Below are positions 1 to 55,732 of a DNA stretch of 64,000 bases, piece by piece (within the stretch, counting starts at the first letter, position 1; every line of letters starts with the position of its first letter). The notes beneath the pieces were generated by a model that was given only the letters and a program-made list of their open reading frames with translations, was not told where the DNA came from and did not search any database. Origin of the DNA: Trichosphaerium sp. ATCC 40318. Lineage: Eukaryota > Protista > Tubulinea. A program made the translations under genes and the position numbers. The stretch spans positions 1-64,000 of the forward strand of contig JALMLS010000514.1 of NCBI GenBank assembly GCA_038496445.1. Direction: 5' to 3'.

Positions 1-302
1 GTTAGATCCCTATAGTACATTGGCTATTACAAACGACAACAGATTAGAAAAGAACCTAGTCTTGGCTTGAATGGTCCCGAAGCCTGAGACCTTGTTTTAT
101 TAACAAGAAAAACTTCCGTGTATATTGTGTACTTGCCTCTAGGTTGTTGACTTTGTCTGTCAAGTCGCCAACCTCCCTCTAACGTCCCTAAAACCCATAA
201 AGTTGTTTAACAGAATATTACAATGATTTCTTTGCGTATAACTCCATGTGCAAGAAATTAGAGTTCTAACAAGAAACTATTTTGAAAACATTTTTTGATT
301 TA

Positions 303-3300
303 TCACATGTCTTGCAAGTTCTCTTTTGCACGAGAAAATTTGAACCTACCCATTACATACGGAGAAGAAATATCCGCAAGCATAAATTGTGGGACCTTGT
401 CAAACGAAATTACACAAGAAGGTAGACTACATCCAGTTTCGGCGTCGCTGTTCCTCTTGTAACTTAATTTCTTCAAATTGTAAGCCTTTTCTATACTTTC
501 TTGTAGCATTAACATCCTCTCATCTCCTTCATCCATCGTAAATCCAGATACATTAACAGATACACCAGGTGTATTACAAACAAGAAGTTGAATTTTTAAG
601 ATCGATCCAAAAAGACTTTCGAAGCAAGAAATGATGGAATACACAATATTGTTAGGCTTGACAGCGATAACAATATTATATATAGTATGGCTATTAGTGG
701 TATCAACTTTTCTGGTAATGTTGAGAGGAGATACGTTGTAATAGTTGAGCATTTCTCTTGTCTTCTCAAAAGCCGAATTGATTTTAAGGAAATCTGAAGA
801 TGAAAGAAAGACCTTCATTATTGGTTCATGGTCTTCCTTATCAAGAAACCGAATAGCTCGTTGAAGTCCTCTAGGATCATTTAGTTCAAAAGAACTTAAT
901 TCTAAGATAATCATTAGAAAAGTAGTGCGTACGAGGTGTCAGATCACCAAAAAAACAAAACAAAAAAAAAAAATTAATAGAACGTACTTTGCGGTTGTTC
1001 CTTATTGTCGACTGTTTGTGTAGCTTGGCGTCCAACCGGTTCTTCTTGTTCTTTATGTTGTTGCTTTGTTGAATTAGACGATTCTTGGTTCAGATTCGGT
1101 TTTGGATGGCTTTCTTTCACATCGAGTGTAAACGAGTGTTGCAATTCAGCTGGAACACCTTGGACAAGCCAATCGCTTTTCTGTTGTACTTCTCTGGGAG
1201 GGTTATATTCGAATGGAATAAATTCATACGCTGTAGGTTTTACATCATCACTTGTAGAGGGTAGTTGAGCAGAAACAGGTTTGTTTGGTTTGTAAGCATA
1301 TTTTGTAAAGTCAAACTTTGGACTTTTGTTTTCTATCTTGTCTTTGTTTTGAACCAATTTGGCTTTGGTATTAGTGGAACTTGTTGGTGACACATGAAAT
1401 TCTGTATCTTGTTTCTTCGCCTTTAATGAAGGGACACGAGGAGTAACTTTTTTTGTGATGACTCCTTTTTTTGGCCTTCTTGTCATTGGTGTCTTGTACG
1501 ACTCTGACATCTTCTTCAATTTCTCTTCTCTTTGTTTTTCGTATGCTCTGTAAGCAGCTTCAAACTCATTCAAGTCATTCTTCCACATTTGCTTCAAAGA
1601 TATTTTGGAAAGGTCGGAAATAGCTTTTCGCTTGTCTTCAAGCTCATTCGATACATTCTGGATGTTTTCACTGCTAATACAGCTGAAAGGAAGCTTTAAG
1701 AAATCAGTGTAGTCTACAGGGGTGACCTCTGGAGATGGTAATGCATCTTAGGAGAAGAGGTTAATATAGAATAAAATCAGTGTCAAAACAAAAGAAGAAA
1801 TGCATTTCATTGGTTGTTACGTACCTTCACGGAGAGAAGTCACTGTTTTACGCATAGATTCGATGTCTTTCCCAAACAAATCAATCTTTTTGGTCGACAG
1901 GTATACAAGAAACTTGAGCTTTGCAGCAAGAACGCACTCTTCATGTTTGAGCCTCTTTAGCATAGATACCTATTTTCATGAACGTCAGTTGTACCTTTAG
2001 AAAATAATGTCACGTGTAAATCACGTGATGTTTTACGAGTTTACCTTCCTGTCAGCGTATCTAGAGAGCCTGTAATCATAAAACGCCTTCATAATATCTT
2101 CAATAGTATCATACTTTTGAATATTGCCATGATGATCAAAGAGATTAATGTTGTTCCTTGATAAGGTTGTAGAAAGTCTGAATTTTTTGATAATCTCTTG
2201 ATCAGACATTTCAAATAATGTAGGTACAGTAACATTAAAGGTAACTAAAAAAGCACGTGTTTACATAAGACGCTGTTTCGAAAAACAAGAAAAGAGTAGG
2301 TAATATCTTTTTGACTCACCTTCATCAGGTACTCGTACTGGTACAGCATACTCCTCGATAATACCATAGCGGGGATCAGAGAGCTTATTGAGAGTATTTT
2401 TATAGTCGGTAATAGAATTGTTTGGAATCTCTGTTATGACCAAAGTCGTGTCATCTAAGCGATAAAAGATACCACTGTGAAAACTTGTAAGTATTTAAAA
2501 CCAAAACATTAAACGTACCTCTTAACCCATAACTGCCTTTTTTTATTCCACTCAATTTTGCCTTTGAACCCTCTATACCAAGGGTTCATAATCTGAAGCT
2601 CTTCACCGTCGAGTAATCGTCTATAAGAACAAGATCAATACATTAATGGAAAAACGTGACTCACCTTAAATTGTGTACAATTTCTATTGGATTAAATTGA
2701 GGCAATGAACATGATACTCCTTGGCCAATACCCTGTGTACCATTCACAAGTACCATAGGTATAATAGGTAGATAATAATCAGGTTCAATAGTATCTCCAG
2801 CGTCGACAAGATAATTCAAGAGAAGATCGTCTTTAGGATGGAATATTGTTCTTGTCAATTTAGATAGGTTGGTAAAAATATACCGAGAACTAGCATGATC
2901 TTTACCGGCATCATTTCTTGTACCGAACTGCCCCAAAGGTTCCAATAAGTTTATGTTATTGCTACCGATATAGTTTTGCCCCATACGTATGATTGTGTTT
3001 GTTAAGGAGCCCTCTCCGTGATGGTAAGCACTTTTCTCGCTGAGAATAAAATTAATAAGTATCAAAAAAGATGTCGCTGAAAATGTTGGCACCTCACATA
3101 GCCGCAAAGTTCTGCTACTTTAATTTCTTTTCTGCTCTTTCTTTTCAAACAACCATAAAGTACTTTGCGTTGTGAAGGTTTTAACCCATCAACAATAGAT
3201 GACACACAACGCTTGATATCAGCAATCGGATACTACATGTCATTTTTTGTTAGAATAAAATTCTTGAAATTCCTCTGGCAGTACCATTATCAACTCCTTG

Positions 3301-5109
3301 TCAATAAAGTCCTTAATGCTCACAGACAATGAAGAAGTATCCAAGTAAATATCTGGGTTGTAAGTGCGCATCCAAGCCTTCCTTGAATTAATTTTATGTC
3401 GACTAAAAGCCATATCAATCGCATCATCATCTTGCTCATCTTATTGGGTTTTTAGTTGACAAAAATAGACTCATCACGTGATACATACTCGTAGGTAAAA
3501 ACATAATCTTATGACGCTCTAAATTCGAAAAAAACTCGGTTGCTTGTACACTTGTGAATGTACCAAGACCTCTGGAGTATAGTGATTTCCATTGATTGAC
3601 ATCATTTGTTTTTTTCCATGCCTCAAATTCTGGAGCTGAATAAAAATCTAGCTTCTCACCATTTCGTTCTAGCTAAAGTATTGAAGTTAATATTTTCATA
3701 AAAGAGCGTTCTAGTGTACAATAACAATGGGTGTTATGAATTCAAACAAAAAGTTGGGAAGTTTCAATAACTCAGGCCAATAAAAGTGAAAAAAATTGAT
3801 CATGAGTGCTTTGATGTGAGTCCCATCCACATCTTGGTCCGTCCTAAACATTACATGTAAAGAAATCAAGTACATGGATAACGGTAAATTCAAAAAGACC
3901 AGAGACGTACATTAGCATTACACTCCCATATCTCAAGTCATCAGTTGATGTATACTGTTTACCAAGTTCAAGTCCAAGAGCGGTTTGTACGTTTTTTAGC
4001 TCCTCGTTCATACCTCTAGAGCTAACTCTAACATTCAAGGGTTTGCCCTGTAATGGGAATACACCGTAATATTTCTTTTGCTTAGTGGCCCGAATACCAG
4101 AGAGTGCCAGAGCCTATGATGTATAAAAAAAGAATGAACAAAATGTCAGCAACACGCACTTTTGCAGAATCGCCTTCAGTGATTATCAGAGTACATTTAG
4201 TAGACTCGCTTGTCCCTGCTTTTGGTGCATCTGATAGCTTTCTAACAGAAACTTTTTTTTTAATGTCACGTGATTTGCACGTTTGTTTTTTTACTGATTT
4301 TGTCTCGTTCTCTTTTTTTTCTGAAACATTAGCTTCACTCACATCTACCACAGAATGAGTTTCTCTAAATTTCAAGAAGACTTTTAGTACCCTTCGCATC
4401 AAGCTTCTCAGCAATAAACTTAATAATACAAGAAGGAGCTTTAAGTATATAGTTAAGAACTTGTGTTCGAATAAAGACTTACTTGACAGCGCCAGAGTAT
4501 TTTTTCGTAGAGCGTCAATATCAACTTGATGACCTTCGTCTATACGAAATTTAAGGATTGTGCCCGTTGTGATCAACGTGGGGTCACATTTAAGCGACAC
4601 TGTATCGTTCTTTGTGAAAATATAACAATTCACTTGTCCACCGTTGGAAACTTCAATGCGAACAGAAGAGCTAAAAGAAAAAAAGGGTCAGCAAAAACCG
4701 TTTAACCTGTTTTCTTAGAAACGGTGAATAGTACCTTATCGATAAAGCTTCTTTTATAAATGGTGGTGGAGGGCAGGAGCCTTTGGAGTCACCGCTGAAT
4801 AAAACTACATAACAATTAAAAAAAACGCGCCAAAAAGCATGTTTGACGCGGTTTGTACGTTGTCTGCCTATCCAGAAGATGATTTCTCTGTCTCGAATGG
4901 TAATATTCAAAAAAGTTGGTTCTGCGTTTACTAAAGCACGTGTTATAACATCAAATACCCTATATACGTCATGTGGGCGTTGTTTTTTAACACTTTTGAT
5001 TAAATTAGCTTTTTGATCTTGTGTAAGACTCGTCGCACTCTGGTTCTGCAGTAGTCTCCATTTTGTTGTCGAGTCAACTGCTTGTTTTGATATCGCCTTT
5101 GTCGAACTT
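303..5109 (-). CDS. TOP2: Atypical DNA topoisomerase II (type IIA), multi-exon; degenerate N-terminal ATPase and extra C-terminal domain; 5' end uncertain
   Basis: Spliced translation gives TOPRIM motifs TEGDSAK, PLQGK, TDQDVDG and RGLGT, then DGLKPSQRK, AYHHGE, FGTR, catalytic ASSRYIFT, PIIPMVLVNG and MWKNDL. GT-AG introns restore frame throughout. ORF 303..914 joins in frame via an intron at ~902-987. Confidence 0.9.
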
Positions 5110-5608
5110 GTTTAAGGCACGTGAATGCTTGTGTACCACAAACTAAGCAATGACTGGAAAAAAGAGCTCAAGGTCGTATCAAGCACCAGGAGCTATTATA
5201 CTAATTTTGATATCAGTGAATAATTATTGAATAAAAGTAGTAAGTTGACCGAGAAAACACTAGATATTAAGTTTGGGAGATCCATACTTAGTACCTTTGA
5301 TAATTTTGCTCTAAAAACACTGCAAGTAGCTGGGATACAAGTACTAAACGCTGTTAATGAGTCGTGGCCTTCCTACCGCAGATGGGTATGATTAATCGAG
5401 TTTACAGCTGCAATTACGATCTATCGCACTATTGTAGCCAATTGCATCAATTGTTGCACAAATCACCTCGAACTACGGAATTCACATTTTTAATAGGGCA
5501 ACGGTACCTCGTATAGAGACTTCTAATACGTCTAGACACCAAAGCGGTAAAAAGAAAGCCAAATCGAACAGAGGTTAGTAAATAAGTTTAAAACTACGCA
5601 AATAATCA

Positions 5609-6627
5609 ATGAATTCGTTCGTAGGTCATAGAAAACGCGAAAGCGAGGATACATACGATAATTACAGCAACAAAGATGATAATTCAGACTTAGGTGGTAA
5701 AAACGAACATACAAAGGTGTGAGGCGTTACATTTAGTAGTTTAAAGCTGTTTATACTACAATGAAACTCTCGCTGACATTTTATTGAATATGAAGGCACG
5801 CAGCGGAAGAGATATGAGGGAGAGACGTAAATCAGATAAAGAACCTGTAACTGAACCGAGATCCAGGGTTGTAAGAAAACATACGTGAGTAGTTGCAAGA
5901 GAAAAAAAGATAAATGAAAAAAAAAAAAAAAAAAAAGAAGTCAAGCTTGACAACGTTTGAATATCACGTTGATATTTTTCTCTAGATTTGAAAAAACAGT
6001 TGAATCTGAACCTTCTCAAAAAGATCTTGATAAGAGAAAACGAAGGTACGTTTCAAGAGCACGTTGTTTAAGAGAGTGTATTGTTTTTTTGCCAAGACGA
6101 CACGAAAAAGTGAACACAGCCGCCTGACTATTCGTTTAGATACAACGCAATTAAAAAACGGAAAGTCCCCCATAATGGATCAGAGAACTCTACTATAATA
6201 CAAGGAGTTATTGTACCTGAGATTGATCAAGTACGTTTTCTGAATGGGAATATACCTACACGTCATTTTTTTTTCTCTGGATGGTAACTAACGTTTGATT
6301 TAGCTTATGAATGATCCAAAGAATGAGAATGTTAAAGACCTATTGGACCGCTTTATTACCTCTGTTACTAATTTAGAGCAACGACAAGCTGGTATCGTAG
6401 ACAGCATGTTTATTCAATTTATGCGAGCAATACAAAAGTACACTTACTAACAATTCTGTTTTTTTCTTACCGTCGTGCTTTTTAGGAAGCAAGGTGATCT
6501 TCGTCTTGGGGTTAGTGTAGCTATTACTCCAGATGCACCCGTCAGTGAAGTAGCTCAGTTACTTCTTAAGCGGTGGCGTGCTCGTGTAAATGTAGAGGAG
6601 CAGAATGAAAAGCCATACTTTTTGTAA
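5609..6627 (+). CDS. Spliced hypothetical protein with a GCKIII/STE20 kinase-like C-terminal dimerisation tail and no kinase domain
   Basis: Exons joined at GT-AG sites give a charged N-terminus, then IVPEIDQLMND..LLDRFITSVTNLEQRQAGIVDSMFIQFMRAIQK..SEVAQLLLKRWRARV. AATAAA lies at the stop. Confidence 0.55.
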
Positions 6628-7690
6628 ATAAATTTTATATTGTTTTGATCTCTCTTTCGACCATCATGATACTCCAAAGCAAGATAATTGCCGTAATAGT
6701 GAGCACAGTTCTATATCTCAGTATGAAGGGTTTAAGTTATGAGAAGTTGCTTACTGTTATTATCCTCAACGATTCGTAAAGGAAATGAACACGTTTTATG
6801 CCGATCTGATAAAAGAGGTGACGTTTCATTACCGACTTAGTATAAATTACCCTCCCTAAGGAGGTATGGTAAGCACTTTTTAAATTGTAAGGAAGTACTG
6901 TTTTAAAAGTACAGTGTTCACTATTTTGTGTAAAGAAAAATAAAAAGTTAAAAAAGGGAGAAACTTGGACTGATGTATGGAGACAGAGTACCAGTTGAGT
7001 AGGTTTTTAGGGTAAGCGTTCACTTACCTTTTTTGTGACTAACTGCCAATAAGGCAGATTTATCTGTGTTTGCTGTAGCGCTTGTGTCGGGTAGTACTAG
7101 AGAAGTTCGGGTAGTTATTTCGGCGTATGGCGGTTGGTCAGCCCCCGAATATAGTATCTTACCCATGTGACCTCTCTCATGGACTCTAGTGATACTGTAT
7201 ACGCTTTTTAAAATAGTTTCTCGCGTGGAGGGCCGACTCTTGGGCTTTTCTTAACTACTCTTACGTTGTTATCCTTACTACCCTTATAAGCTTTTTTTAG
7301 TAGTAGCGGTGTTACAACGGTGCGCTAGTATCACACTCTAAAACAAGTGTATCACAATATAATAGGTTTGAGTTTTAAAAAAACCGTAACTTCAGTTGTA
7401 CTCAATGAAGAACATCCAGTAACTATTTTACCAAAAAAAAAATCACTTGGCTCGTCGTGTTTTTTTCTTTTTTTTGAGCACTGTTAGCATATTTTTGTAC
7501 CGCCTTACAGCTCATGTAAATCTCTCCTTTAAGTTTTAATGTATCAACATAGTAACTAAGAACAACTTCGCACCTAAAAAGGGCTATACACAAGTTTTTT
7601 AGGTAAATTTCCAGAACGGTAAAAAATGTTGATCACAAATTCTCCTCTCCAACACTAGCTACCACACCTCACCAAAACGCTATAACTACC

Positions 7691-8823
7691 ATGGACGGAA
7701 GAATTATAGCTTTAGTGTGTCTATGTACCTTCGTATCACTCATATCAGCTCATGGACGCCTTACAGTACCTGAAACAAGGGACGTACAAAACGGCAGACG
7801 TATTGACCAGCAACACGCTCCAGTATTCCTTCAAAACGGCGATTGGGTATCAGGACACGTGTGCAGAGATCTTCCTTTTGTCGGTTCAACAGCAACGTAC
7901 CAAGCCGGAGAAACTTACTCAACTGAATGGTTCTTCGAAGCAAATCATCCTGGAGATTGCTTTTTCTACCTCTCCTTCGATAATGAACAAACTTGGGCTA
8001 AGATAGCCGAGATCCGCGATTGTCACCTCATAAGTGGATGGGATATGTACATTCCTTCTTGGGTTCCTAGTGGACCAGCGGTACTTCGCTGGGAATGGTA
8101 TGCTCTTCAACAAGTCGTCAATGTTGAGCACTATCTTCAATGTGCCGATGTCACTATCACTGGCGGGAACACAGGAGCTGTCTCATGGACCCCAGTTGTT
8201 ACTATCCCTGGTCACCTTCCTTTGGACGCTAGCGGCTACAGACGCGTGTATGATGTAGGCGCTCCTTTCTTCTTCACTGGACCTGCAGTGGCACAGTTTA
8301 TGTCTGGTGGTACATTTAGCCCTACTAATCAACCAGTAGCACCACCACCAATGAGTGGTAGTACTCCTACACCATCCGGTACCGCTTTCTGTCCAACTGT
8401 TTCAAACGTTGTAATCAACAGTACGCCCTTTGGTGTTTCGTTCTGCATTTTTTTTACTGTATTTACTTTTTCTTTAGACTTTGGCACAAGTATGAATGTC
8501 CTCGTATCTCTCACAGCACCATCAAGTGGCGCTCCAGTAAGGTCTATAAGAGTAAGACAAGTATCTCCAGCTGGAGCTACAACGGATAATTGTTGGTCAT
8601 CTACTGGCGTAGTTGCCTCTGCATCAGCCACTGAAACAGGCACTAAATTCGTATGTGCTGTTTTCAAAACGTTTTTTTGACTGGCACTAACTTCTTTTTT
8701 TAGATCAGCTTGTACAATCCTTGGCCAGCAGGTACTGAGATTATGGTCATCGGATGTGCTTGGGATCTCGGCGATGACAACATTGCAGTATCTGTAATAG
8801 AAGTAAATGGTAACGCATGTTAG
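7691..8823 (+). CDS. Secreted lytic polysaccharide monooxygenase with Pro/Thr linker and C-terminal CBM2-like module
   Basis: Signal peptide is followed directly by His (HGRLTVP). Second His in ANHPGDC, plus VLRWEW and EHYLQCADV motifs. Two introns (~8421-8477, ~8651-8703); ends VNGNAC. Confidence 0.8.
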
Positions 8824-13675: not shown

Positions 13676-14890
13676 ATGTCTATGTTTCCTTTGGAAGTTC
13701 TAGAACATATCTTCGAGTTCTTGAGCATAGACGACCAAATATCTTCAAGGGCCACAAGCAAAGCCGTAAACGCGTTAATACTGCGTCTGATAACGAAAGG
13801 AGAGGCTAAAAGCAATGAAATATTTAAAAAGCCTGTAAACATACCAATAGATCTTCCAACCCTCGAGGAACCTACCTTTAAGATATGTAAGTTCATATCA
13901 GACGATATTTACGCTTGTGGAGGCTATACAAAAAAATTACTCTTTTTGGCGTTTTTTCGCCTCTCAGACGATAAAAACAAGCTGACGTTTATAAACATGA
14001 TCACAGAAGATAAAACAAGGACAATGGAGCTTCATAGTGATGTTTTCTTCTTGGCTGGAGATTATGTTTTAGTTGGTTACAAATTTCTTCCTGGAAATTA
14101 CTACGAGTCAAAGTACTCCATCTTTAATATCTCAACTGGAGAACGTCATTTTGACGAAGAGTATTCTCCAACCTTTGCATCAGTTTGTTCTGTTGAGAGA
14201 ATCTACAAAGAAATGGTAAGCGATGATGAGTGCGAAGAAGAAGAAGAAAACGTATCAAAAGTAGAAAAATCAAAAGTTGATTTCGTCATTGGACACTGGG
14301 GTATTTATTGGTTTACTTATACATTGGATGATAAGACAGATTATCTAAGAATAAGATATCAATCATCAAGAGACGTTTTTGGGACATTTGAAAGCGTGTC
14401 AGATCTTCTGAGTGTCGATGAAGATATAGTTATTTCAGGTTCTGACAATAGACTTATTGTATGGACTAAGAATGTACCTGGTCGTATCATAGAGCTTAAG
14501 AAAAAATACATACAGAATATGCAAATGATTGATAATGATCACGTGATTGTAAAGCTAATGCGAGGTGTTGTTATTGTAAACTGGAGGACAGGTCAAGTGC
14601 TAAAACAAGCTGGTTGTGATACCAGTACAATATTTTCAAATTACAACAATAGTGCTTTCATCTTAACACATAGATCCCATTTTGCTGTATACGATTTTAT
14701 AGGAACTGGTGATACAAAATTAAGAAGGTTACAGATATTTGATAATGGCGCTCAAACATTATTGGTGTCTAGTAGTTACAAGAGACCAGTAAAAACAGTA
14801 ATTTCTGATACAATCAAGGTATTTTTCTATTTCTGGAAAAACGACTTGGAAAGCTTTATTCGTTGTATAAAACACAACCATGGATCTTAA
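13676..14890 (+). CDS. Intronless F-box protein with beta-propeller (WD40-like) C-terminal region
   Basis: MSMFPLEVLEHIFEFLSIDD..ATSK F-box. Beta-strand repeats such as IVISGSDNRLIVW and VVIVNWRTGQ. Confidence 0.75.
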   Translation: MSMFPLEVLEHIFEFLSIDDQISSRATSKAVNALILRLITKGEAKSNEIFKKPVNIPIDLPTLEEPTFKICKFISDDIYACGGYTKKLLFLAFFRLSDDKNKLTFINMITEDKTRTMELHSDVFFLAGDYVLVGYKFLPGNYYESKYSIFNISTGERHFDEEYSPTFASVCSVERIYKEMVSDDECEEEEENVSKVEKSKVDFVIGHWGIYWFTYTLDDKTDYLRIRYQSSRDVFGTFESVSDLLSVDEDIVISGSDNRLIVWTKNVPGRIIELKKKYIQNMQMIDNDHVIVKLMRGVVIVNWRTGQVLKQAGCDTSTIFSNYNNSAFILTHRSHFAVYDFIGTGDTKLRRLQIFDNGAQTLLVSSSYKRPVKTVISDTIKVFFYFWKNDLESFIRCIKHNHGS

Positions 14891-19670: not shown

Positions 19671-22600
19671 TTACTTTTTACTGGTATTTCGATTCCTTTG
19701 GCGCCTTTGCATTCTATTCAAAGTTAGTGTATGTCTCGTTCAATCACAAAAACAAATTTTCTTGTATCACTATTTGGTTGGGGTGGAACTACGTACCTCT
19801 CAAATCGTTTTCTTTCCTCAAGTGCTTCTTCATCTTCCTCTTCTTCAATTTGTGCTTCTGCTTCAACAGAAGGCGCTGACGCATCCACATTAACACTAGC
19901 ATCACCAGCTACTGTAGATTCGAATAGAGAAGCCTTCTCAAGCAAGCCACCGCTAAAACAAAAACTATTAGATAAAAAACCTTGTTGACAATCTTTTTGC
20001 TTACCTAGTCACTTCAGGTTGCTCTACAACTCGTGTTGGTGCCTTCTCTGCTGATACAACGCTTTCATACTCTTCTGCACGTGCACTAAGTGCACCTTTT
20101 GTAACAATAGGTGCTTCAACAACACGTTTAACTGGCTTGTCGTCTTTAGCGACTACTGTTTCAAACTCGTTTGCAACACCCCTTAAACCTCCTGTTGTAA
20201 CAACAGGTTGTTCAACAGTCCTTACAGGACGTTCTTCAGTAGCAACAGTGGACTCATATTGCTCCGCACGTGCACGCATCGCACCCCTTTGGAGAATTGT
20301 TAGAACATATTCTTATGAAAGTAGTAGAGCATACTTTGTGACTTGTGGTTGCTCTACCATTCGTGCTGGTTGTGCTGAAACTGCAACTGATGTCTCAAAT
20401 TCAACTGCTTTTGCACGAAGAGCACCAGCATTTACCAAAGGTTGGTCAACACTTCGTCGAAAGTTTTTCTTATCATCTGCAGTAACATTACTTTCGTACT
20501 CTACAGCCATGTTCTTTCCAGAACCAGTAGAAAATGTAGGTTTCTCTACAGACCCTATCGACGTACACATAAGTAAGGCATCTATTAAGAAAAAAATACG
20601 AAAAAAATGATAATAAAGAAGACGTACTATCTATAACAGCTGCTCTTGTTAGTCCAGAACCAGATAACCATGCATTTCTTAGGCTTGCTAGTTTCCCTGC
20701 AGGAGGTGTAACATCTCCACTACGTGCAGATGTAGGTCTTTGAGACTCTTTCTCTTCAACTGTTCTTTCAAACTCCTCTGCTTTTGCTATGGCTCCACCA
20801 CGCGTCACAACAGGTTGTTCAACAACACCTAATAAGTTTGTGTTTTAATACACGTGATTTAAATAAAACGCACGTGTTGCTTTTGCATCTTTACTACCTT
20901 CCCAAAAACCTCCTACAGTTGCCACAGGCACAGATGAAGTCATCACATGAGGCTCTTCTGGATCTTTAAACATTTCTGTTTAAAACATGAGTACAAACGC
21001 TGTTTGGCTGATTTGACGTACTCCTTATCCGTGTGGCATCTGCTTGTAACGATTTTTGGAAGCCTGCCATACGTGCTTTAAGGGAAGGATCCCAACCACC
21101 TGCTTTTTGTTTTACCTGAAATTGTGTGAGGAGAAAGGAAAGCATGCAGAGTACTTTTTTTCGCATACAATTGGTTTTTCTTTTTTAACTACTACTGTTT
21201 CAAACTCCTGTGCCTTTGCTTTTAGTGCACCTGGAGAAACTATCGGTTGCTCAGCACGTTTTATAGTCGTAATGCCAACAGGAGCAATAACCTAGAGTAG
21301 CCGTAAACATAACACAATGACGCACAAAACGTACAGTTTCAAATTCTTCTGCTTTAGCTTTAAGCCCTCCTTTTTGAACTTCAGGTTGTTCTACGCTTCG
21401 CGGAGCAGCCTTCTCTGTAGCTACAGTACGTTCAAACTCAGCAGCAGTAGCGAGCATAGCTCCTTTTGTTACAGTAGGTGTTGCTGATTTCTCAAAAGAG
21501 TTATCTTCTTGTAACACACGCTCATACTGCTCTGCAGCAACACGCATGGATCCTTGCTTAACCTAAAGTAAAAAAGTTAGTGGACTTCCTTCACGTGTTC
21601 TTAAAAAAAAACAAAAAAAACAAAACAGCAAGAAACATAGTACCTCCGGTTGTTCTACAGATCTCTTTACTGGTCCTTCTTGACTAACTGTCCTCTCAAA
21701 CTCTTCAGCTACACCCTTAAGGGCACCTGACTGTACAATAGGTTGCTCAACGCTTCTGCCTGTTAAGTTTGGACTTGAAGCTGTCTTCTCATAAAGCTCT
21801 GCTTTAGCACGCATGGCGCCGGCTTGAACTTGAGGCTGCTCAACTGTCCTTGATACTGCTTTATCCTCTGCAACAATTTGTTCGTATTCAGCAGCTTTAT
21901 GCTTCATTGCTCCTTTTTGTACTTCAGGTTGCTCTACCATACGAGAAACTTCTTTGTCTTTTACAACTTCTGTTTCAAAGTGAATTGCAGCACCCTTCAT
22001 AGCTCCACTGTTCACTTCAGGTTGCTCAACTGTACGTTCTACTAATTTACCTTTTGATAGAGTGGTTTCATAGTGATCAGCAGCGTCCTTCATGGCACCC
22101 TTTTGAACTTCAGGTTGCTCAACCATACGTTCAACTTCTTTGCCCTTAGCAATTTCTGTTTCAAAATGGATTGCAGCGTCTTTCATGCCACCTTTTTTGA
22201 CTTCTGGTTGTTCTACCATACGCTCAACTTCTTTGCCTTTTGATAACGTTGTTTCAAAATGTTCTGCAGCGTCCTTCATGGCGCCAGCCTGGACCTCAGG
22301 TTGTTCAACCATACGTTCTACATCTTTGCCTTTCGATAATGTTGTTTCAAAGTGCTCAGCAGCATCCTTCATGGCGCCCTTTTGTACCTCAGGTTGCTCG
22401 ACCATACGCTCAACTTCTTTGCCTTTTGTGACCTCTGTTTCAAAATGAATAGCAGCGTCTTTCATACCACCCTCATTTACTTCTGGTTGTTCAACCATAC
22501 GCTCTACTTCTTTACCCTTTGATAATGTAGTTTCAAAGTGATTAGCAGCATCCTTCATGCCACCTGCTTGGACTTCAGGTTGGTCAACCATACGTTCTAC

Positions 22601-25600
22601 ATCTTTGCCTTTCGATAATGTTGTTTCAAAGTGCTCAGCAGCATTCTTCATGCCACCTTCATTAACCTCAGGTTGTTCGACCATACGCTCAACTTCTTTG
22701 CCTTTTGCAAGCTCTGTTTCAAAATGAACTGCAGCATCAATCATAGCACCTTTTTGTACATCTGGTTGCTCAACCATACGTTCAACAGCCTTGCCCTTAG
22801 ATAAGTTCTCTTCAAAGTCTACGGCAGCATCCTTCATAGCACCAGATTGTACTTCAGGTTGTTCCACTGTGCGAGCAATATCTTTAGGCTCCGAAGCCTT
22901 AAGAAAAAGTCAGAAAGAATCAAGAAAAAAAAAGTGCTTGACATACTTGACGTTCGAACTCTACTGCCTTTTCTTTCATAGCGCCTGAATTAACTTCTGG
23001 TTGTATTGTAGGATCAGCCATTGCTTGAATTTCTGGAAATGCATCTACAAGATCTGCAAGAGACTTTCTTTTCACCATCTTCTTTTTCCCTCCTTTGCTC
23101 TTTCTTGGTGCAACTGTAAGTTCTATCGGACTCATAGCGATCGGTTTGCCTTGTACCATAATTAGTTACTACGACAATGTATCACTTCAAAGAATAGTAT
23201 AAATTCATACCTAATATGTTGACGTGGATAGCAATTCCTTCTTCCTTTGTTGGTTTATACTCAATGTCAAAAGTTCCATCATCATTATCAAAAATCTTTG
23301 TTGTCATTTCGTTGGTACTATCAATCTTTACATCTATATCTGAAGGCTTTATATCTGCAGGGTTTCCATCACCGTCTACTGGTGATAGAGTAAAAATTGC
23401 AGTAACACCTAAACAAATAAATAAACAATGAGAAACCAGAAAGTAGTAAAAAAACAAGACTCATTAATTCGTACCAACTCTAACACGACCATCTCTAATA
23501 CCAAATCCTTTCGCTGCAGTGTTCGCCCAAGACAGTGGAGAATTACTACTTTCTTTTACCATCCCGACTAACAAACAAGTAAACACAGCAATGTAAAACA
23601 AATCACAAAAAACGTACCAATTGACGATGGCGATCCTTTTATGTTTTCACCATCAAGTTGTACTGATACATTGTATGTTCCCGCAGTAGGTAGGATATAC
23701 GAAAATTCAAATAGTCCATCATCTAGCACATCACGTGAGAAATAAATCAACCTCACAAAAAAAACCAAACTCTTACCTTTTGCTGTTGTTATGACGTTGA
23801 CATGCTCTGGACCATCTACAAAAACGCGAACTTTTGCAGAAGCTACTGAAATAGGTTTTGCGAATTGATCGCATACATTTAATGTGAATAGTGATTCTTT
23901 TCCAACAGTTACACTAGCTCCATCCTAAAAACTCAATGAGCTAAATTTCAAAATTTCAAAAAAAAAAACAAAATCAGTACAAGTCCATTAATAACACTAT
24001 CAGATCTAGAGATGTAAGGTTTTTGATTCTCATCCGGTTTCTTCGATTCTACTACCTCCTAGAATCGAAAATAAGGCTTTAACAGAAGGCAACGTTTAAC
24101 CACTGTACGTCTTCAACGATATTAAAAGTCCATGGAGAATCTTTAATATCTTTACTATCTATAGTTACGTTGACTGTGTATTCACCAGCCTCTGTAGGAT
24201 TCCACTCAACATCATACGTGGAATTTTCATTATCAAAAACATCTCCTTGCGTAACTCCAGCTGGACCCTTTACAGTGACCAAAAGTGTGCTTTCACCAAG
24301 TTCAACACCACTACGAAAAAAAAATAAAGTAAGAAAACTTCGTTTAAAAGTCAAATAGTGGTCGTACTTGTCGTTAACGTCTCGTGTGTGTACAGTGAAA
24401 CAAGCTCTCTTTTTTGGTTTTAGTGATTCCTCAACTAAACCACGACCTTTGGCAATAGTGTTTGGTGCAAAAGGGGGAACTACAAGTACAGGTTGAGATT
24501 GAACTTGTTCAAGCGCTGAATAATAATGAGTAAACAATGCGAGCGAAGCGGTAGCAGAGAACGAACCTCTATCCAAGTCCATCTCTATTGCAAAGGGACT
24601 TCCTTTAATGTTTTTGCCACAGATCTTGGTATATATCGTGTAATCAGCGGTCTTTGGTGGTGTCCAGGTAACACTCCATGAGCCTGAATAGAATAAGATA
24701 ACTGAAGATGATCAAGGATTTTTTTACCGTCTTCGTTCTCCTTGAGCTCTGGTTGTGTGGTTACTGGAACAAAGCCAGTTATTTGTACTTTCAACTAGTT
24801 GTGTTAGAATTTACAACAAAGTGTAAAAAGCACCGTACGTCATCTATCTTGATGCGACATAACGCGCCGTCGTTGTCTCGAGGATATACGCTGTATGTAG
24901 CTGGCTCTTTAGCGCGTAGTGTGTCACCTTTGTGCGAATTAACCAAACCGCGCCAAAACAACAAATACACGCACCATCAAGACCACTACCTCCAGCGTTG
25001 CTCATAAAGCCATTTACCGGTTTTGTAGACAAGGTAGCAGGAGATTCTTGCTTTTCTTCAACTTCACTTTCAACCTCTTCTGTTGCTTTTGGCGGTTCTT
25101 CTACATCGCCTTCAATGTAGTGTTGGTCTTTTTACAAACAGCAATAAAAGAATGTTCAACAAAAAAAAAATCGTATTTTCGCCATAACTGTCCAATAAAC
25201 GAACAAATATGATTTTAAACATAAAAATAAAACAATATATGATTACATATTACTATTTACCAGTGTCTTGTGTCTTTGGCGTGCCAACAGTTACTTTAAA
25301 TGGACTACCTTGTATATCTTCGTCCTTGACGCGTACATGTATGACATAGTCGCCCTAGACGCGCTTTTAGCAATTTGTAAATTGGCCCAACTGCGCTACT
25401 TGTTTTTGTCACTATAAAAAACGTACTTCAGTAGGTGGAACCCAATCAATGTCAAAGCTTTGTTCTGCGCCTTCATCACCTTCTGAATTGTCGTATATTT
25501 CAACTTCGCATTCCGCTGGTCCACCAATGGCCACCTAGTGATGTGCGATTAATAGTGATTGGTACTGAGCAATGAATACTGGGCTTTCTGTTTTGGAATA

Positions 25601-32944: not shown

Positions 32945-34475
32945 GTGTCTTGGAACTACACAAAGATCAACTACAGAGGACATGAATAGAACCGGTCGCT
33001 GCTTGTCAGCCTACTCATCGAGGTCTTCTTCTTCATCGAGCTAATCAGGTTCATAAAAGCTCTTCAAGGTCGTTAAGTTTATTAACTAGTTTACTCACTC
33101 AAGTTGTAACTGGGTTCTATTTAAATAAATTTTTGTGTTGACTATGATTCGTTTGTATTTGTTGTTGAAACGCAGATGATATAAATTCTGACAAAACGGT
33201 AGTAATTATTCACTGAGGCCCCAGGGTCGAAAAAAACCTTCTTCTTGTCATCGCACCTGTTGTGTTGAACCTGCTTATCCAATTTTCTTACAGTCAAAAG
33301 AATTCTATTTGGTAATAATCCTGCCAGACCGCATGGCCAAACCAGAACATAAGGTACTTACAAATCTATTTAACACGTTAAATTGTACTTGTCAGCGAGA
33401 ATATAACGTGATTTTAATAGAATTATTTGGAAAAACCAGATGTTACTTCTCTATTATTACACCTTCCCGTTGAGATACAGCTTGATATCATAGATATTGA
33501 TTTTGAAGTATATTTAAAATATCCTATATTATCAAGAAGATCAGCATCTACAACAAGGTTTGATACTGACTTAAAGAAACATTCAAAATGGCTGAGACGT
33601 ATTGAATCACCTGAATTTCAAATCACTTATCAAGAGTGTTGGCGTCATGGTAAGAGAGAAGGAGACTTTAAAAAGTGGTATGACAATGGTCAATTATGGG
33701 AGCAATGCTATTACGTCAATGATGCACTTGAAGGAAAATATAAGCGGTGGCATAGAAATGGACAATTATCAGAACAATCGATTTACTCAGAAGGTAAATT
33801 AAATGGAGAATACACTCAATGGCACAATGAAGGCCAGTTGAAAGAAAAGTGTTATTATGTTGATGACAAGCGAGAAGGTGAATACTTGTCTTGGTGTGAT
33901 AATGGTCAACTTTATGAGAAGTGTCATTATGTTGACGGAAAGCTTGAAGGAGAGCTAAAGTATTGGTTTCCTTTCGGAGAATTAAAACAAGTTGAAACAT
34001 ATGTCAATGGTATACGACATGGGTTGTATAAACGTTGGGCCGCAAAATCTGTACCTGAGGAACAGTGTTATTATGTTGAAGGTAAAATGGAAGGAGAATA
34101 CAAGAGCTGGTACTTCAATGGTAATTTAGAAGTTCATTGTTGGTTTGTTAATGATAAGTACGATGGAGAGTATAGACGTTGGCATTTCAATGGAAACCTC
34201 AAAAAGGAATGCCACTACACTGCTGGTGGCCTTGATGGCGAATACAATGAGTGGTATGACAATGGCAAATTGAAACAGTGTCTGAATCTAAATGCTAAAC
34301 AAAATCAATTATGCAATATCTGTTGAGCGAATTTCTTCGATTTTAAACCTTGGCAGGTACTTTTCTAGTGCCACTATCAACTCTTACACTATCACTTGAT
34401 CTGGAATATGTCTGATCTTGTTGTATTAAAGCTCTTAAATTTCAATTGCTTGTAACCACTGAAAGTCACGTGAAA
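32945..34475 (+). repeat. Left arm of ~1.5 kb inverted duplication (partner 42603..44395)
   Basis: Aligns to the reverse complement of 42603-44395. Covers the SPRY-gene 3' end, intergenic DNA, the MORN gene and its 3' flank. Confidence 0.9.
33333..34326 (+). CDS. F-box-like + MORN-variant repeat protein, copy A
   Basis: Exon 1 MAKPEHK (33333-33353), intron 33354-33420, then NYLEKPD..LLHLPVEIQLDI and about 10 WYDNGQL-type repeats. Confidence 0.85.
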
Positions 34476-42749: not shown

Positions 42750-43740
42750 TCAACAGATATTGCATAATTGATTTTGTTTAGCATTTAGATTCAGACACTG
42801 TTTCAATTTGCCATTGTCATACCATACCTTGTATTCGCCATCAAGGTTACCAGCAGTGTAGTGGCATTCCCTTTCCAACTTTCCATTGACATACCAATGC
42901 CTATACTCTCCATCGTACTTATCATTAACAAACCAACAATGAACTTCTAAATTACCATTGAAATACCAGCTCTTGTATTCTCCTTCCATTTTACCTTCAA
43001 CATAATAACACTCTTCCTCAGGTAAAGATTTTGTAACCCAACGTTTATACAGACCATGTCGTTTACCATTGACATATGTTTCAACTTGTTTTAATTCTCC
43101 GAAAGGAAACCAATACTTTAGCTCTCCTTCAAGCTTTCCATCAACATAATGACACTTCTCATAAAGTTGACCATTATCATACCAAGACAAGTATTCACCT
43201 TCTCGCTTGTTATCAACATAATAACACTTTTCTTTCAACTGGCCTTCATTGTGCCATTGTGTGTATTCTCCATTTAATTTACCTTCTGAGTAAATCGATT
43301 GTTCTGATAATTGTCCATTTCTATGCCACCACTTATATTTTCCTTCAAGTGCATCATTGACGTAATAGCATTGCTCCCATAATTGACCATTGTCATACCA
43401 TTTTTTATGCTCTCCTTCTCTCTTGCCATGACGCCAACACTCTTGATAAGTGATTTGAAATTCAGGTGATTCAATACGTCTCAGCCATTTTGAATGTTTC
43501 TTTAAGTCAGTGTCAAACCTTGTTGTTGACGCTGATCTTCTTGACAATACAGGATATTTTAAATATACTTCAAAATCAATATCTATGATATCAAGTTGTA
43601 TCTCAACGGGAAGGTGTAATAATAGAGAAGTAACATCTGGTTTTTCCAAATTCTATTAAAATCACGTTATACTATCGCTAACAAGTACAATTTACCGTGT
43701 TAAATAGATTTGTAAGTACCTTATCTTCTGTTTTGGCCAT
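42750..43740 (-). CDS. F-box-like + MORN-variant repeat protein, copy B
   Basis: Exon 1 MAKTEDK (43720-43740), intron 43653-43719. About 20 aa differences from copy A over 299 aa. Confidence 0.85.
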
Positions 43741-54430: not shown

Positions 54431-55732
54431 ATGCTGTGTTTGCCTACAGAAATCATATTTTGTATTTTATCTTTCTTGGGTAAACGTGATCGTATTTCTT
54501 CAACGTTTGTATGTAAATTCTTTTCTACAATAATTATAAATCATTTGGGATATTACAAGATTACTGTGACATCAAAGGAAGACTTTTCAAGACTTTCTAA
54601 AAGTCCTTTGCTGAAAAACACAAAAGTTATTGTTGACAACCATACGTATACAGTAACTACAGATGACTTCAAGAATATCTCTGGTGTACACCACCTAGAG
54701 ATAGAAGACTTAGTTGAAATAACAGATACTATGTTAGAACATATTACAGGCGTACACTGCCTGGAACTACAGATCACAAGTGCGTCAAAGCTAACATGTG
54801 GTGGATTTAAATCATTGTCGGGTGTTCATACAATAGACTTGACTTATGGGTATTTTAACGATGAATGGATTCAAGGGCTTTGTGACATCCATACAGTTAA
54901 TATTGCCGGTACGAATATATCTGATAAAGGTCTTGCAGCACTATCTGGAGTTCACAGTATTGACCTATCAGATTGCTACAGTATTACAGACAAAAGCGTT
55001 ATTGCAATTTCAGGTTACATACACAAGATACAGTTAAACGGATGTAAAATTACTGATGAAAGTATCAAGGCATTAACAAAGGTACACTCTATATCTTTGA
55101 TTGATTGTAAGAATATATCAGATGAGGGCATTAAGTACTTATTAACACACAATCAAAAAACACTTACTATAAACAAAATAGTGCTAGACAATTGTGTACA
55201 AATATCGAACAACACATTGAAGCTATTGGCTGGAGTACCGTGTGCAGAGCTTGTTAATTGCACTCAACTACATGATGATACACTGTCTTGTTTAGTAGGT
55301 ATACAGCATATTGATTTGTATCGTTGTAAGTCTATAACAAGTGATGGAATACAAAAGCTATCAGGAGTAAAAGTGATTGACATTTCAAAGCTTGATTGTG
55401 TTGATGATAGTACTTTAGAATCACTTGCAGGTGTCCAAACTATTATTCTCACGGATACAAAAATAACAGATAAAGGCCTTGGTTACTTGATAGGCGTTAA
55501 AATCATCAACCTTGATGATTGTAAGTACATCACTGATAAAGGTGTAAATCGTCTTGTTGGTGTTAAGAAGCTATCCTTAGAAGGCTGTTTTCAAATCACA
55601 GATAGTGGTGTTGCTAGTCTAACAAGCCTATATCGTATTAATCATCGGTGTACCCAAATTACACAGAAGATGGTTGACTATCTAGTAGCAGAAGATGTGT
55701 TTGATGAAGAAGGCTTTTGGCCTGATTTTTAG
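54431..55732 (+). CDS. Intronless F-box/LRR protein
   Basis: MLCLPTEIIFCILSFL F-box and many ~22-aa LSGVHxIDLxxCxxITD repeats. Confidence 0.9.
   Translation: MLCLPTEIIFCILSFLGKRDRISSTFVCKFFSTIIINHLGYYKITVTSKEDFSRLSKSPLLKNTKVIVDNHTYTVTTDDFKNISGVHHLEIEDLVEITDTMLEHITGVHCLELQITSASKLTCGGFKSLSGVHTIDLTYGYFNDEWIQGLCDIHTVNIAGTNISDKGLAALSGVHSIDLSDCYSITDKSVIAISGYIHKIQLNGCKITDESIKALTKVHSISLIDCKNISDEGIKYLLTHNQKTLTINKIVLDNCVQISNNTLKLLAGVPCAELVNCTQLHDDTLSCLVGIQHIDLYRCKSITSDGIQKLSGVKVIDISKLDCVDDSTLESLAGVQTIILTDTKITDKGLGYLIGVKIINLDDCKYITDKGVNRLVGVKKLSLEGCFQITDSGVASLTSLYRINHRCTQITQKMVDYLVAEDVFDEEGFWPDF

What the first reader, a model, noticed from the sequence alone, without database searches (positions are those of the whole stretch)
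2661..5109. Topoisomerase II with intact cleavage core but vestigial ATPase and no transducer domain
Seen: the TOPRIM acidic residues (EGDS, DQDVD) and catalytic RY are intact and the splicing preserves frame. Under ~290 codons precede EGDS, versus about 450 in canonical Top2. No GGRNGYG ATP-lid or NNGxG motif is visible. Remnants of the GHKL fold (LNITIRDREIIFW, VRIEVS, GTILKF..DALRK..IIKFIAEKL) run via a ~20-aa charged linker straight into KLSDAPKAG. PLRGK reads PLQGK and KGLG reads RGLG. Known: the ATPase gate guards against stray double-strand breaks; C. elegans cin-4 and TOPOVIBL are precedents for ATPase-less derivatives. Inference: a specialised ATP-independent DNA-cleaving or chromatin-structural paralogue.
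Basis: partly seen in the sequence, partly recalled or inferred. Interest (0 to 1): 0.85.

Follow-up and report, generated by a model that had tools for sequence, protein, structure and literature searches.

The report
Amoeba topoisomerase II without ATPase motor
A marine amoeba (Trichosphaerium sp.) transcribes and splices an 18-exon gene for a topoisomerase II that keeps the whole DNA-cutting core but lacks the ATP-driven clamp, giving a natural enzyme on which to test why these enzymes need ATP.

Summary
It is a minus-strand, 18-exon gene (CDS 5061..306, 1253 aa). It matches TRSP10656.t1, "DNA topoisomerase 2-like", 1251 aa, on Trichosphaerium sp. scaffold scf.00078 (Tekle 2023).

Spliced contigs of one public run confirm three introns directly. 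Their ends fit two more exon boundaries. They run unspliced to 5197, and a TGA lies 15 nt before the ATG at 5061, so no upstream ATPase exons are spliced on.

TOPRIM (EGDSA, DQDVD), the catalytic Arg-Tyr (aligned to Y805 of human TOP2A), tower and C-gate are intact. Only 202 residues precede EGDS.

A profile of 34 full-length Top2 aligns only from the last transducer helix onward. No GHKL or transducer signal exists in the protein or anywhere in the 64 kb.

The "vestigial GHKL" reading is weak: one N-box-like stretch (4/500 shuffles) and sub-threshold language-model look-alikes.

No orthologue was found. The branch is long and unplaced.

Best reading: an ATPase-less cleavage-core paralogue working without its own ATP gate. 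A separately encoded ATPase partner is not excluded.

This scan already noted a second such gene, and an ATPase-only gene, on other DNA of this genome.

The parts
306..5197 (-). Whole transcription unit as far as supported: 5'UTR, 18 coding exons and stop codon at 308-306. Equals TRSP10656.t1 of Trichosphaerium sp. scaffold scf.00078.
   Evidence: Gene model. Spliced contigs. Gene-order match to Table S2 of PMC10521059.
5039..5197 (-). First exon: 5'UTR with no upstream ATG, an in-frame TGA at 5076-5074, start ATG at 5061-5059, and codons 1-7 (METTAEP).
   Evidence: A contig of run X2 lies colinear on 5039-5197 and ends exactly at the donor at 5038. Sequence read.
4391..4992 (-). Exons 2-5 (4992-4859, 4804-4735, 4670-4483, 4438-4391): orphan N-terminal region, aa 8-154. 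It contains an N-box-like stretch YRVFDVITRALVNA (4964-4923) in which the catalytic Glu position is Val.
   Evidence: Intron 4734-4671 confirmed by a spliced contig, and a contig covers exon 2 end to end. No family match. Weak N-box signal.
4909..4914 (-). T6 run in exon 2 (A6 on the + strand). The run-X2 contig has one more base here, which would frameshift the N-terminus.
   Evidence: table 4: 'put in behind 4908: A', one contig at depth 3.8.
4160..4320 (-). Exon 6: Lys-rich linker that aligns to the last transducer helix and linker, followed by the TOPRIM catalytic Glu motif EGDSAK (4177-4160).
   Evidence: Top2 profile alignment starts here at node 375. Composition.
3285..4113 (-). Exons 7-10: rest of TOPRIM (PLQGK 4056-4042; DQDVDG 3839-3822) and TOPRIM_C (SRGLGT 3576-3559).
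   Evidence: Pfam TOPRIM_C 1e-13 and 1e-14. Profile alignment.
2665..3232 (-). Exons 11-12: winged-helix (5Y-CAP) domain with AYHHGE, GQFGTR and catalytic Arg529-Tyr530 (Tyr codon 2882-2880).
   Evidence: Pfam DNA_topoisoIV 1.4e-45. PDB human TOP2A 2e-45, aligned 753-876.
1825..2620 (-). Exons 13-16: tower and coiled-coil arms leading to the C-gate.
   Evidence: Profile alignment. Introns 2319-2245 and 2044-1970 confirmed by spliced contigs.
988..1746 (-). Exon 17: end of the C-gate region plus about 200 aa of Lys/Ser/Pro-rich, probably disordered C-terminal tail.
306..901 (-). Exon 18: extra roughly 197-aa domain of unknown fold, joined by an 86-nt intron (987-902).
   Evidence: In-frame GT..AG join. 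The published model length of 1251 aa requires it. A contig covers 690-866. No Pfam or atlas match, and the AlphaFold2 model has pLDDT 38.

Best explanation
Shown: an expressed, intact nuclear gene of Trichosphaerium sp. encodes a 1253-aa type IIA topoisomerase paralogue. It consists of a 145-aa orphan N-terminal region, a basic linker, a complete TOPRIM / winged-helix / tower / C-gate cleavage core with every catalytic residue, a basic tail, and an extra C-terminal domain. It has no GHKL ATPase and no transducer.

Inferred mechanism: it dimerises through the DNA gate and C-gate as Top2 does. It cleaves and reseals a G-segment through Tyr530 with Mg2+ held by Glu203 and Asp278/280/282. Having no ATP-operated N-gate, it works without ATP hydrolysis of its own. 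That would mean slow ATP-independent strand passage (relaxation, decatenation) and/or regulated double-strand cleavage, with the basic tail boosting DNA engagement, as in the engineered ATPase-less human TOP2B core. The orphan N-terminal region and the extra C-terminal domain would supply targeting or restraint in place of the ATP gate.
For: - Gene model and frames.
- Expression and splicing: contigs of run X2 skip exactly introns 4734-4671, 2319-2245 and 2044-1970 with GT..AG ends on the minus strand. They end at 5039 and at 4992/4859, as predicted for intron 5038-4993 and the donor at 4858.
- N-terminus fixed: contiguous 5'UTR to 5197, in-frame TGA 15 nt upstream, no upstream ATG.
- The ORF runs for 154 codons before TOPRIM in 36%-GC DNA.
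- Core: 906-bit match to a Top2 profile, nodes 375-1244. About 40-45% identity to canonical enzymes. The query keeps 133 of 153 columns that are at least 90% conserved, including all catalytic ones. Tyr530 aligns to Y805 of human TOP2A.
- No ATPase or transducer.
- Independent gene prediction of 1251 aa in the published genome.
- Biochemical precedent: the ATPase-less hTOP2B core performs ATP-independent relaxation and decatenation, its CTD potentiates this, and DNA damage rises (PMC10853770).
- A second gene of the same build is noted elsewhere in this genome (not checked by me).
Against: - No biochemistry was done, and ATP independence is inference.
- The same genome is noted to hold a gene for 'only the ATPase gate', so a two-subunit ATP-dependent enzyme is possible.
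- The one X2 contig over exon 2 carries an extra base in the T6 run, which would truncate the ORF in that strain or allele.
- The query differs at 20 highly conserved columns, against a median of 4 in relatives. Examples are KYYKGLGTS to SLYSRGLGTF, GIGTGWS to GIGQGVS and LILFS to LIMYP.
- Its branch is twice the median length, so altered or reduced activity is possible.
- No orthologue was found, so no dN/dS could be computed.
Confidence: 0.45

Rival explanations
1. Split enzyme. This protein is the cleavage ('A-like') subunit of a two-gene type IIA topoisomerase. A separately encoded GHKL-transducer protein docks on the orphan N-terminal region and basic helix and restores an ATP-operated N-gate. 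The break would fall between transducer and TOPRIM, as in topo VI B/A rather than GyrB/GyrA.
For: The scan's note s1-418780 reports an 'intact spliced gene encoding only the ATPase gate of topoisomerase II' in the same genome. The protein keeps the last transducer-helix and linker segment (profile nodes 375-410). It also has a 145-aa N-terminal region with no other assigned role.
Against: The ATPase-only gene could be a fragment of the canonical TOP2. No co-expression or interface evidence exists. No ATPase-type sequence lies within the 64 kb.
Confidence: 0.25
2. Regulatory or structural paralogue. It rarely or never passes strands. Instead it acts as a DNA-crossover or chromatin-binding protein, or forms heterodimers with the canonical Top2 that cannot close an N-gate, damping or redirecting Top2 activity.
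For: Dimer interfaces (C-gate, WHD) are conserved. Conserved non-catalytic motifs are unusually altered and the branch is long. Extra domains sit at both ends.
Against: Every catalytic residue is kept across roughly 55-60% sequence divergence from canonical Top2 enzymes. That is not expected if catalysis were dispensable.
Confidence: 0.15
3. Decaying copy. The N-terminus was lost through degeneration and the gene is on its way to becoming a pseudogene, or is already null in some strains.
For: A +1 base in the exon-2 T-run in the X2 contig. The N-terminus is an orphan sequence. There is a faint N-box-like remnant with the catalytic Glu replaced by Val.
Against: A 3.76-kb ORF stays open across 17 correctly spliced introns and is transcribed. 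All catalytic residues are kept. The frameshift rests on one low-depth contig. A second copy with the same build is reported.
Confidence: 0.08
4. Annotation artefact. ATPase exons exist but were missed, either further upstream, on another scaffold, or joined by trans-splicing.
For: Only one run with short, low-depth contigs supports the 5' end.
Against: The contig runs colinear with the genome from 5039 to 5197, with an in-frame stop before the ATG. A divergent + strand gene starts near 5608 (TRSP10657). No GHKL or transducer signal appears in any frame of the 64 kb. The published prediction has the same length.
Confidence: 0.04

Closest known systems
Canonical eukaryotic DNA topoisomerase II (human TOP2A/B, yeast Top2)
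   Same: Same TOPRIM-WHD-tower-C-gate order on one chain. About 40-45% identity over roughly 700 aa. All catalytic residues are present, and there is a basic C-terminal tail.
   Different: The roughly 400-aa GHKL ATPase plus transducer is replaced by a 145-aa orphan region. A 197-aa extra C-terminal domain is added. It differs at 20 of 153 near-invariant columns and sits on a long branch.
Engineered ATPase-less hTOP2B core with or without CTD (Bandak et al. 2023, PMC10853770)
   Same: Same domain content: cleavage core plus basic tail, without the N-gate. This is the only biochemical model for how such a protein can work, namely ATP-independent strand passage with more cleavage.
   Different: That protein is a laboratory truncation. 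This one is a natural, expressed gene with additional terminal domains. The paper states that no ATPase-less type IIA enzyme had been noted in genomic data.
C. elegans CIN-4
   Same: A Top2 paralogue beside TOP-2 (PMC5584148). From my own knowledge, not checked here, it lacks the N-terminal ATPase domain (Stanvitch and Moore 2008).
   Different: CIN-4 is a recent nematode duplicate that is very similar to TOP-2. The amoeba gene is a deep, long, unplaced branch with novel N- and C-terminal domains. I ran no direct sequence comparison.
Giant-virus (Nucleocytoviricota) Top2
   Same: Comparable identity to the query as cellular Top2 (62-65% in exon 12). The host genome is rich in giant-virus genes (PMC10521059). 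FastTree joined the query to an entomopoxvirus Top2.
   Different: The viral enzymes keep HATPase_c and DNA_gyraseB and have no introns. With the long-branch virus removed and IQ-TREE LG+G4 used, the query leaves the viral clade.
Topo VI A / Spo11 and bacterial GyrA/ParC, T4 gp52
   Same: Cleavage subunits that carry no ATPase and depend on a separate GHKL subunit. They are the model for the split-enzyme rival.
   Different: Spo11 and VI-A have the order CAP then TOPRIM and belong to type IIB. GyrA, ParC and gp52 lack TOPRIM. Here TOPRIM precedes the WHD on one chain, and the best matches are eukaryotic Top2.

Membership tests
Eukaryotic-type type IIA topoisomerase (Top2) | TOPRIM fold with catalytic Glu (EGDSA) and the DxDxD metal site | tested here: met
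   EGDSAK at aa 203-208 and DQDVDG at aa 278-283. Profile alignment and Pfam TOPRIM_C.
Eukaryotic-type type IIA topoisomerase (Top2) | Winged-helix 5Y-CAP domain with catalytic Arg-Tyr | tested here: met
   SSRY with Tyr530 aligned to Y805 of human TOP2A. DNA_topoisoIV 1.4e-45.
Eukaryotic-type type IIA topoisomerase (Top2) | Tower and coiled-coil C-gate | tested here: met
   Continuous alignment to profile nodes about 800-1090.
Eukaryotic-type type IIA topoisomerase (Top2) | GHKL ATPase domain (N-box Glu/Asn, G1/G2 boxes, ATP lid) | tested here: not met
   No HATPase_c at E up to 10. No profile or hhalign match. Only an N-box-like stretch with Val in place of the catalytic Glu.
Eukaryotic-type type IIA topoisomerase (Top2) | Transducer domain (DNA_gyraseB, QTK loop) | tested here: not met
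   No PF00204. The profile aligns only from its last helix, node 375.
Eukaryotic-type type IIA topoisomerase (Top2) | ATP-dependent strand passage | not testable with these tools
   Needs enzyme assays.
Type IIB cleavage subunit (Spo11 / topo VI-A) | Domain order CAP then TOPRIM, with type IIB sequence signature | tested here: not met
   The order here is TOPRIM then WHD. All PDB matches are type IIA.
CIN-4-like ATPase-less Top2 paralogues | Orthology or close similarity to nematode CIN-4 | not tested
   No CIN-4 sequence was fetched. The query is a deep unplaced branch among 61 Top2 sequences, so common descent with a nematode-specific duplicate is unlikely.
Split type IIA enzyme with separate ATPase subunit | A partner gene encoding GHKL plus transducer that forms a complex with this protein | not testable with these tools
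   Only an unchecked note of such a gene exists. That sequence could not be reached.

The most novel reading that the evidence does not exclude
Trichosphaerium carries a natural type IIA topoisomerase that has dispensed with a covalently attached ATP gate. Either it is the first characterisable ATP-independent Top2 in nature, possibly used for programmed DNA breakage or ploidy changes in this multinucleate amoeba. Or it is the first eukaryotic Top2 split into a separate GHKL-transducer subunit and a TOPRIM-WHD subunit, a topo-VI-like quaternary plan in the IIA family.
Probability: 0.3. Interest if true: 0.85.

Novelty: new variant of a known kind. Interest (0 to 1): 0.68.

Why it matters
Why relaxing and decatenating type II topoisomerases burn ATP is a long-standing question. 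The current proposal is that the ATPase protects the genome from the enzyme's own breaks. It rests on engineered truncations, and its authors wrote that no ATPase-less type IIA enzyme had been noted in genomic data (PMC10853770).

Here is a natural, transcribed and catalytically intact example with new domains at both ends, in a cultivable amoeba with a published genome. It allows direct tests of three points:
- whether such an enzyme passes strands without ATP
- how a cell tolerates or exploits it
- whether the added domains or a separate ATPase subunit replace the N-gate

The gene is already in a published annotation as 'DNA topoisomerase 2-like', but its architecture was not remarked upon.

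Tried and rejected
1. First gene model, starting at 5111: rejected because it has no ATG. Replaced after the read layout.
2. Orthologue searches:
   - The 1.8-billion-protein library queried with exon 12 gave only canonical or viral Top2 at 67% identity or less. The top two hits are mis-joined canonical genes.
   - Every hit with a short N-terminus still has a transducer, so these are truncated annotations.
   - JGI metagenomes and IMG/VR queried with exon 12 gave 69% identity or less. Queried with the C-terminal domain they gave nothing.
3. A mixed alignment of one canonical Top2 with the exon pieces, meant to reach full-length relatives: MAFFT scattered the fragments, so I abandoned it.
4. 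GHKL remnant tests: PDB phmmer, Pfam at E up to 10, profile hmmsearch, hhalign, pairwise Smith-Waterman, and my own profile alignment with shuffles. Only the N-box stretch rises above shuffles.
5. Viral origin: suggested by FastTree, but not upheld by IQ-TREE after removing the long-branch poxvirus.
6. Structure:
   - AlphaFold2 of the C-terminal domain alone gave pLDDT 38.
   - AlphaFold2 of exon 4 alone gave pLDDT 63 and no Foldseek match.
   - The spliced N-terminus (aa 1-200) has no reference and was not typed in, so it was not folded.
7. Language-model atlas: the C-terminal domain and exon 2 were uninformative. Exon 4 gave only sub-threshold GHKL-type look-alikes.
8. The other topoisomerase rows of Table S2 could not be retrieved, because the stored file is cut.
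Full report
**What is there**

The finding lies on the minus strand of a 36-37% GC, intron-rich eukaryotic sequence. Six-frame reading and a search for in-frame GT..AG joins gave a multi-exon gene. Its pieces hit Pfam TOPRIM_C (1e-13 and 1e-14) and DNA_topoisoIV (1.4e-45). They hit no HATPase_c and no DNA_gyraseB.

**Expression and the true 5' end**

Two public runs hold parts of the stretch. Laid on 300-5600, contigs of run X2 are 96-100% alike. They skip exactly 4734-4671, 2319-2245 and 2044-1970, with GT..AG ends on the minus strand. These contigs therefore derive from spliced RNA, and they confirm three of my introns.

Two further contigs fix the 5' end:
- One contig covers exon 2 end to end (4992-4859), with short unmatched tails on both sides.
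- One lies colinear on 5039-5197 and stops at 5039.

Together they fit a 46-nt intron, 5038-4993.

A TGA lies 15 nt upstream of that ATG in frame, and no other ATG occurs between 5062 and about 5200. A divergent + strand gene begins near 5608. The N-terminus is therefore fixed.

The resulting model has 18 exons, introns of 44-86 nt and 1253 aa.

**Identity of the locus**

A previous note of this scan suggested the organism is Trichosphaerium. The published genome has 37.7% GC, a mean intron of 75 bp and 8.7 introns per gene (PMC10521059).

Table S2 of that paper lists these genes on scaffold scf.00078:
- TRSP10656.t1, 'DNA topoisomerase 2-like', 1251 aa, best hit a plant
- a 237-aa orphan
- later a 404-aa orphan
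- a 433-aa Harvfovirus-like protein

The window's single-exon ORFs of 404 aa (13676-14890) and 433 aa (54431-55732) match in order and length. The gene has thus been predicted independently at the same length. Its missing ATPase is not mentioned in that paper.

**The core is an intact Top2**

A profile built from 34 full-length Top2 sequences matches the protein at 906 bits over nodes 375-1244 of 1264, with no break at any exon junction. Identity to canonical enzymes is about 40-45%.

These motifs are present:
- EGDSAK, DQDVDG, AYHHGE and GQFGTR
- Arg529-Tyr530
- PIIPMVLVNG

Exon 12 aligns to human TOP2A 753-876, which puts Tyr530 on Y805.

Of 153 core columns that are at least 90% conserved in 61 relatives, the protein keeps 133. 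The 20 changes are not catalytic. They include KYYKGLGTS to SLYSRGLGTF, LILFS to LIMYP, RSIPS to RCVSS and GIGTGWS to GIGQGVS. Even so, 20 changes is well above the median of 4.

**The ATPase and transducer are absent**

Only 202 residues precede EGDS. The profile aligns from the last transducer helix and linker onward.

An N-terminal-only profile of 409 nodes finds nothing in the first 215 residues. It also finds nothing in any of 2,725 six-frame pieces of the whole 64 kb; best E is 2.5. hhalign gives a probability of 0.5%. PDB and Pfam searches of exons 2 and 4 are empty.

**Is the N-terminus a GHKL remnant?**

Pairwise Smith-Waterman scores do not exceed shuffles.

A profile Smith-Waterman of my own always selects residues 18-45 (YRVFDVITRALVNA..ITIRDRE) against the N-box and first strand (YKIFDEILVNA..VTIDRE). 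In that alignment Val stands at the position of the catalytic Glu.
- 17-24 of 300 shuffles reach its score for the whole N-terminus.
- 4 of 500 shuffles reach it for residues 9-60, a stretch chosen after seeing the alignment.

Residues 53-145 score below shuffles against the remaining GHKL columns.

The language-model atlas returns HSP90, sacsin and HATPase_c_3 fragments for exon 4, at 0.77-0.79. That is below the 0.9 line, so it is a lead only. AlphaFold2 of exon 4 alone gives a three-stranded sheet plus a helix at pLDDT 63, with no Foldseek match.

I therefore treat the N-terminal 145 aa as an orphan region. Descent from a GHKL domain is possible but unproven. The spliced N-terminus could not be folded, because it has no reference and I did not type it in.

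**Relatives and origin**

- No closer relative than canonical or viral Top2 turned up. The best is 67% identity or less in the most conserved exon, from the 1.8-billion-protein library.
- All hits with short N-termini still carry a transducer.
- JGI metagenomes and IMG/VR gave 69% identity or less. The C-terminal domain found nothing.
- FastTree paired the protein with an entomopoxvirus Top2 inside a clade whose contigs carry giant-virus genes, and flagged long-branch attraction.
- With that row removed and IQ-TREE LG+G4 used, the protein is an unresolved deep branch of length 1.0, against a median of 0.53.

Its origin, whether an old host duplicate or a viral acquisition, stays open.

**How it most likely works**

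Shown: the domain content, the catalytic residues and the transcription.

Inferred: a Top2-like dimer that cleaves and reseals DNA without an ATP-operated N-gate. The only biochemical model is the ATPase-less human TOP2B core. That core relaxes and decatenates without ATP, is strongly helped by its basic C-terminal domain, and causes more DNA damage (PMC10853770). The amoeba protein has such a basic tail and also two extra domains that could target or restrain it.

The main rival is a split enzyme. This scan notes, on other DNA of the same genome, a gene said to encode only the Top2 ATPase gate, and a second ATPase-less Top2 with the same C-terminal module. I could not reach those sequences.

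**Open problem**

The single X2 contig across exon 2 has seven rather than six T in the run at 4909-4914. No alternative frame rescues that version, so it would end the ORF in exon 3. It may be an error, a strain difference or a null allele. With T6 the ORF stays open for 154 codons before TOPRIM and 1253 codons in all, which argues that T6 is the functional state.

**Novelty**

The gene is in a published annotation, and C. elegans CIN-4 is a precedent for an ATPase-less paralogue. That CIN-4 lacks the ATPase is my own knowledge; PMC5584148 confirms only that it is a second topo II gene. The field's recent statement is that no ATPase-less type IIA enzyme had been noted in genomic data. This is a deep, structurally elaborated, expressed example, so I rate it a new variant of a known kind.

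Noticed in passing
window 705-731 (exon 18): The run-X2 contig carries a 27-nt in-frame tandem duplication of ACTTTTCTGGTAATGTTGAGAGGAGAT. This adds 9 aa to the extra C-terminal domain, so it is a strain or allele length polymorphism.
   Followed up: partly
window 5155 (5'UTR) and 4322: X2 contigs show a 22-nt deletion in the 5'UTR. Two other contigs match exon 6 up to 4322 and then continue into unrelated sequence. That could be transcripts of the second paralogue sharing this intron position.
   Followed up: no
window 33427-34326 (+) and 42750-43649 (-): Two nearly identical 299-aa F-box plus MORN-repeat ORFs lie in inverted orientation about 8.4 kb apart, forming a gene-bearing palindrome. 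The published table calls such genes 'YwqK family antitoxin'.
   Followed up: no
window 21563-22867 (-): A 434-aa ORF made of about 13 tandem repeats of roughly 30 aa (..GKEVERMVEQPEVQKGAMKDAA.HFET..). It probably belongs to the 1554-aa 'gelation factor'-like gene TRSP10665.
   Followed up: no
window 7691-8680 (+): A 329-aa secreted protein whose mature end begins HGRL... after a signal peptide, with a Ser/Thr/Pro-rich tail. It looks like a lytic polysaccharide monooxygenase. It does not obviously match the published gene list at that position.
   Followed up: no
window 5608-6630 (+): A divergently transcribed small intron-containing gene starts about 550 bp from the Top2 ATG. It is probably TRSP10657, 237 aa, with no BLAST hit. 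The two genes share a short bidirectional promoter region.
   Followed up: no
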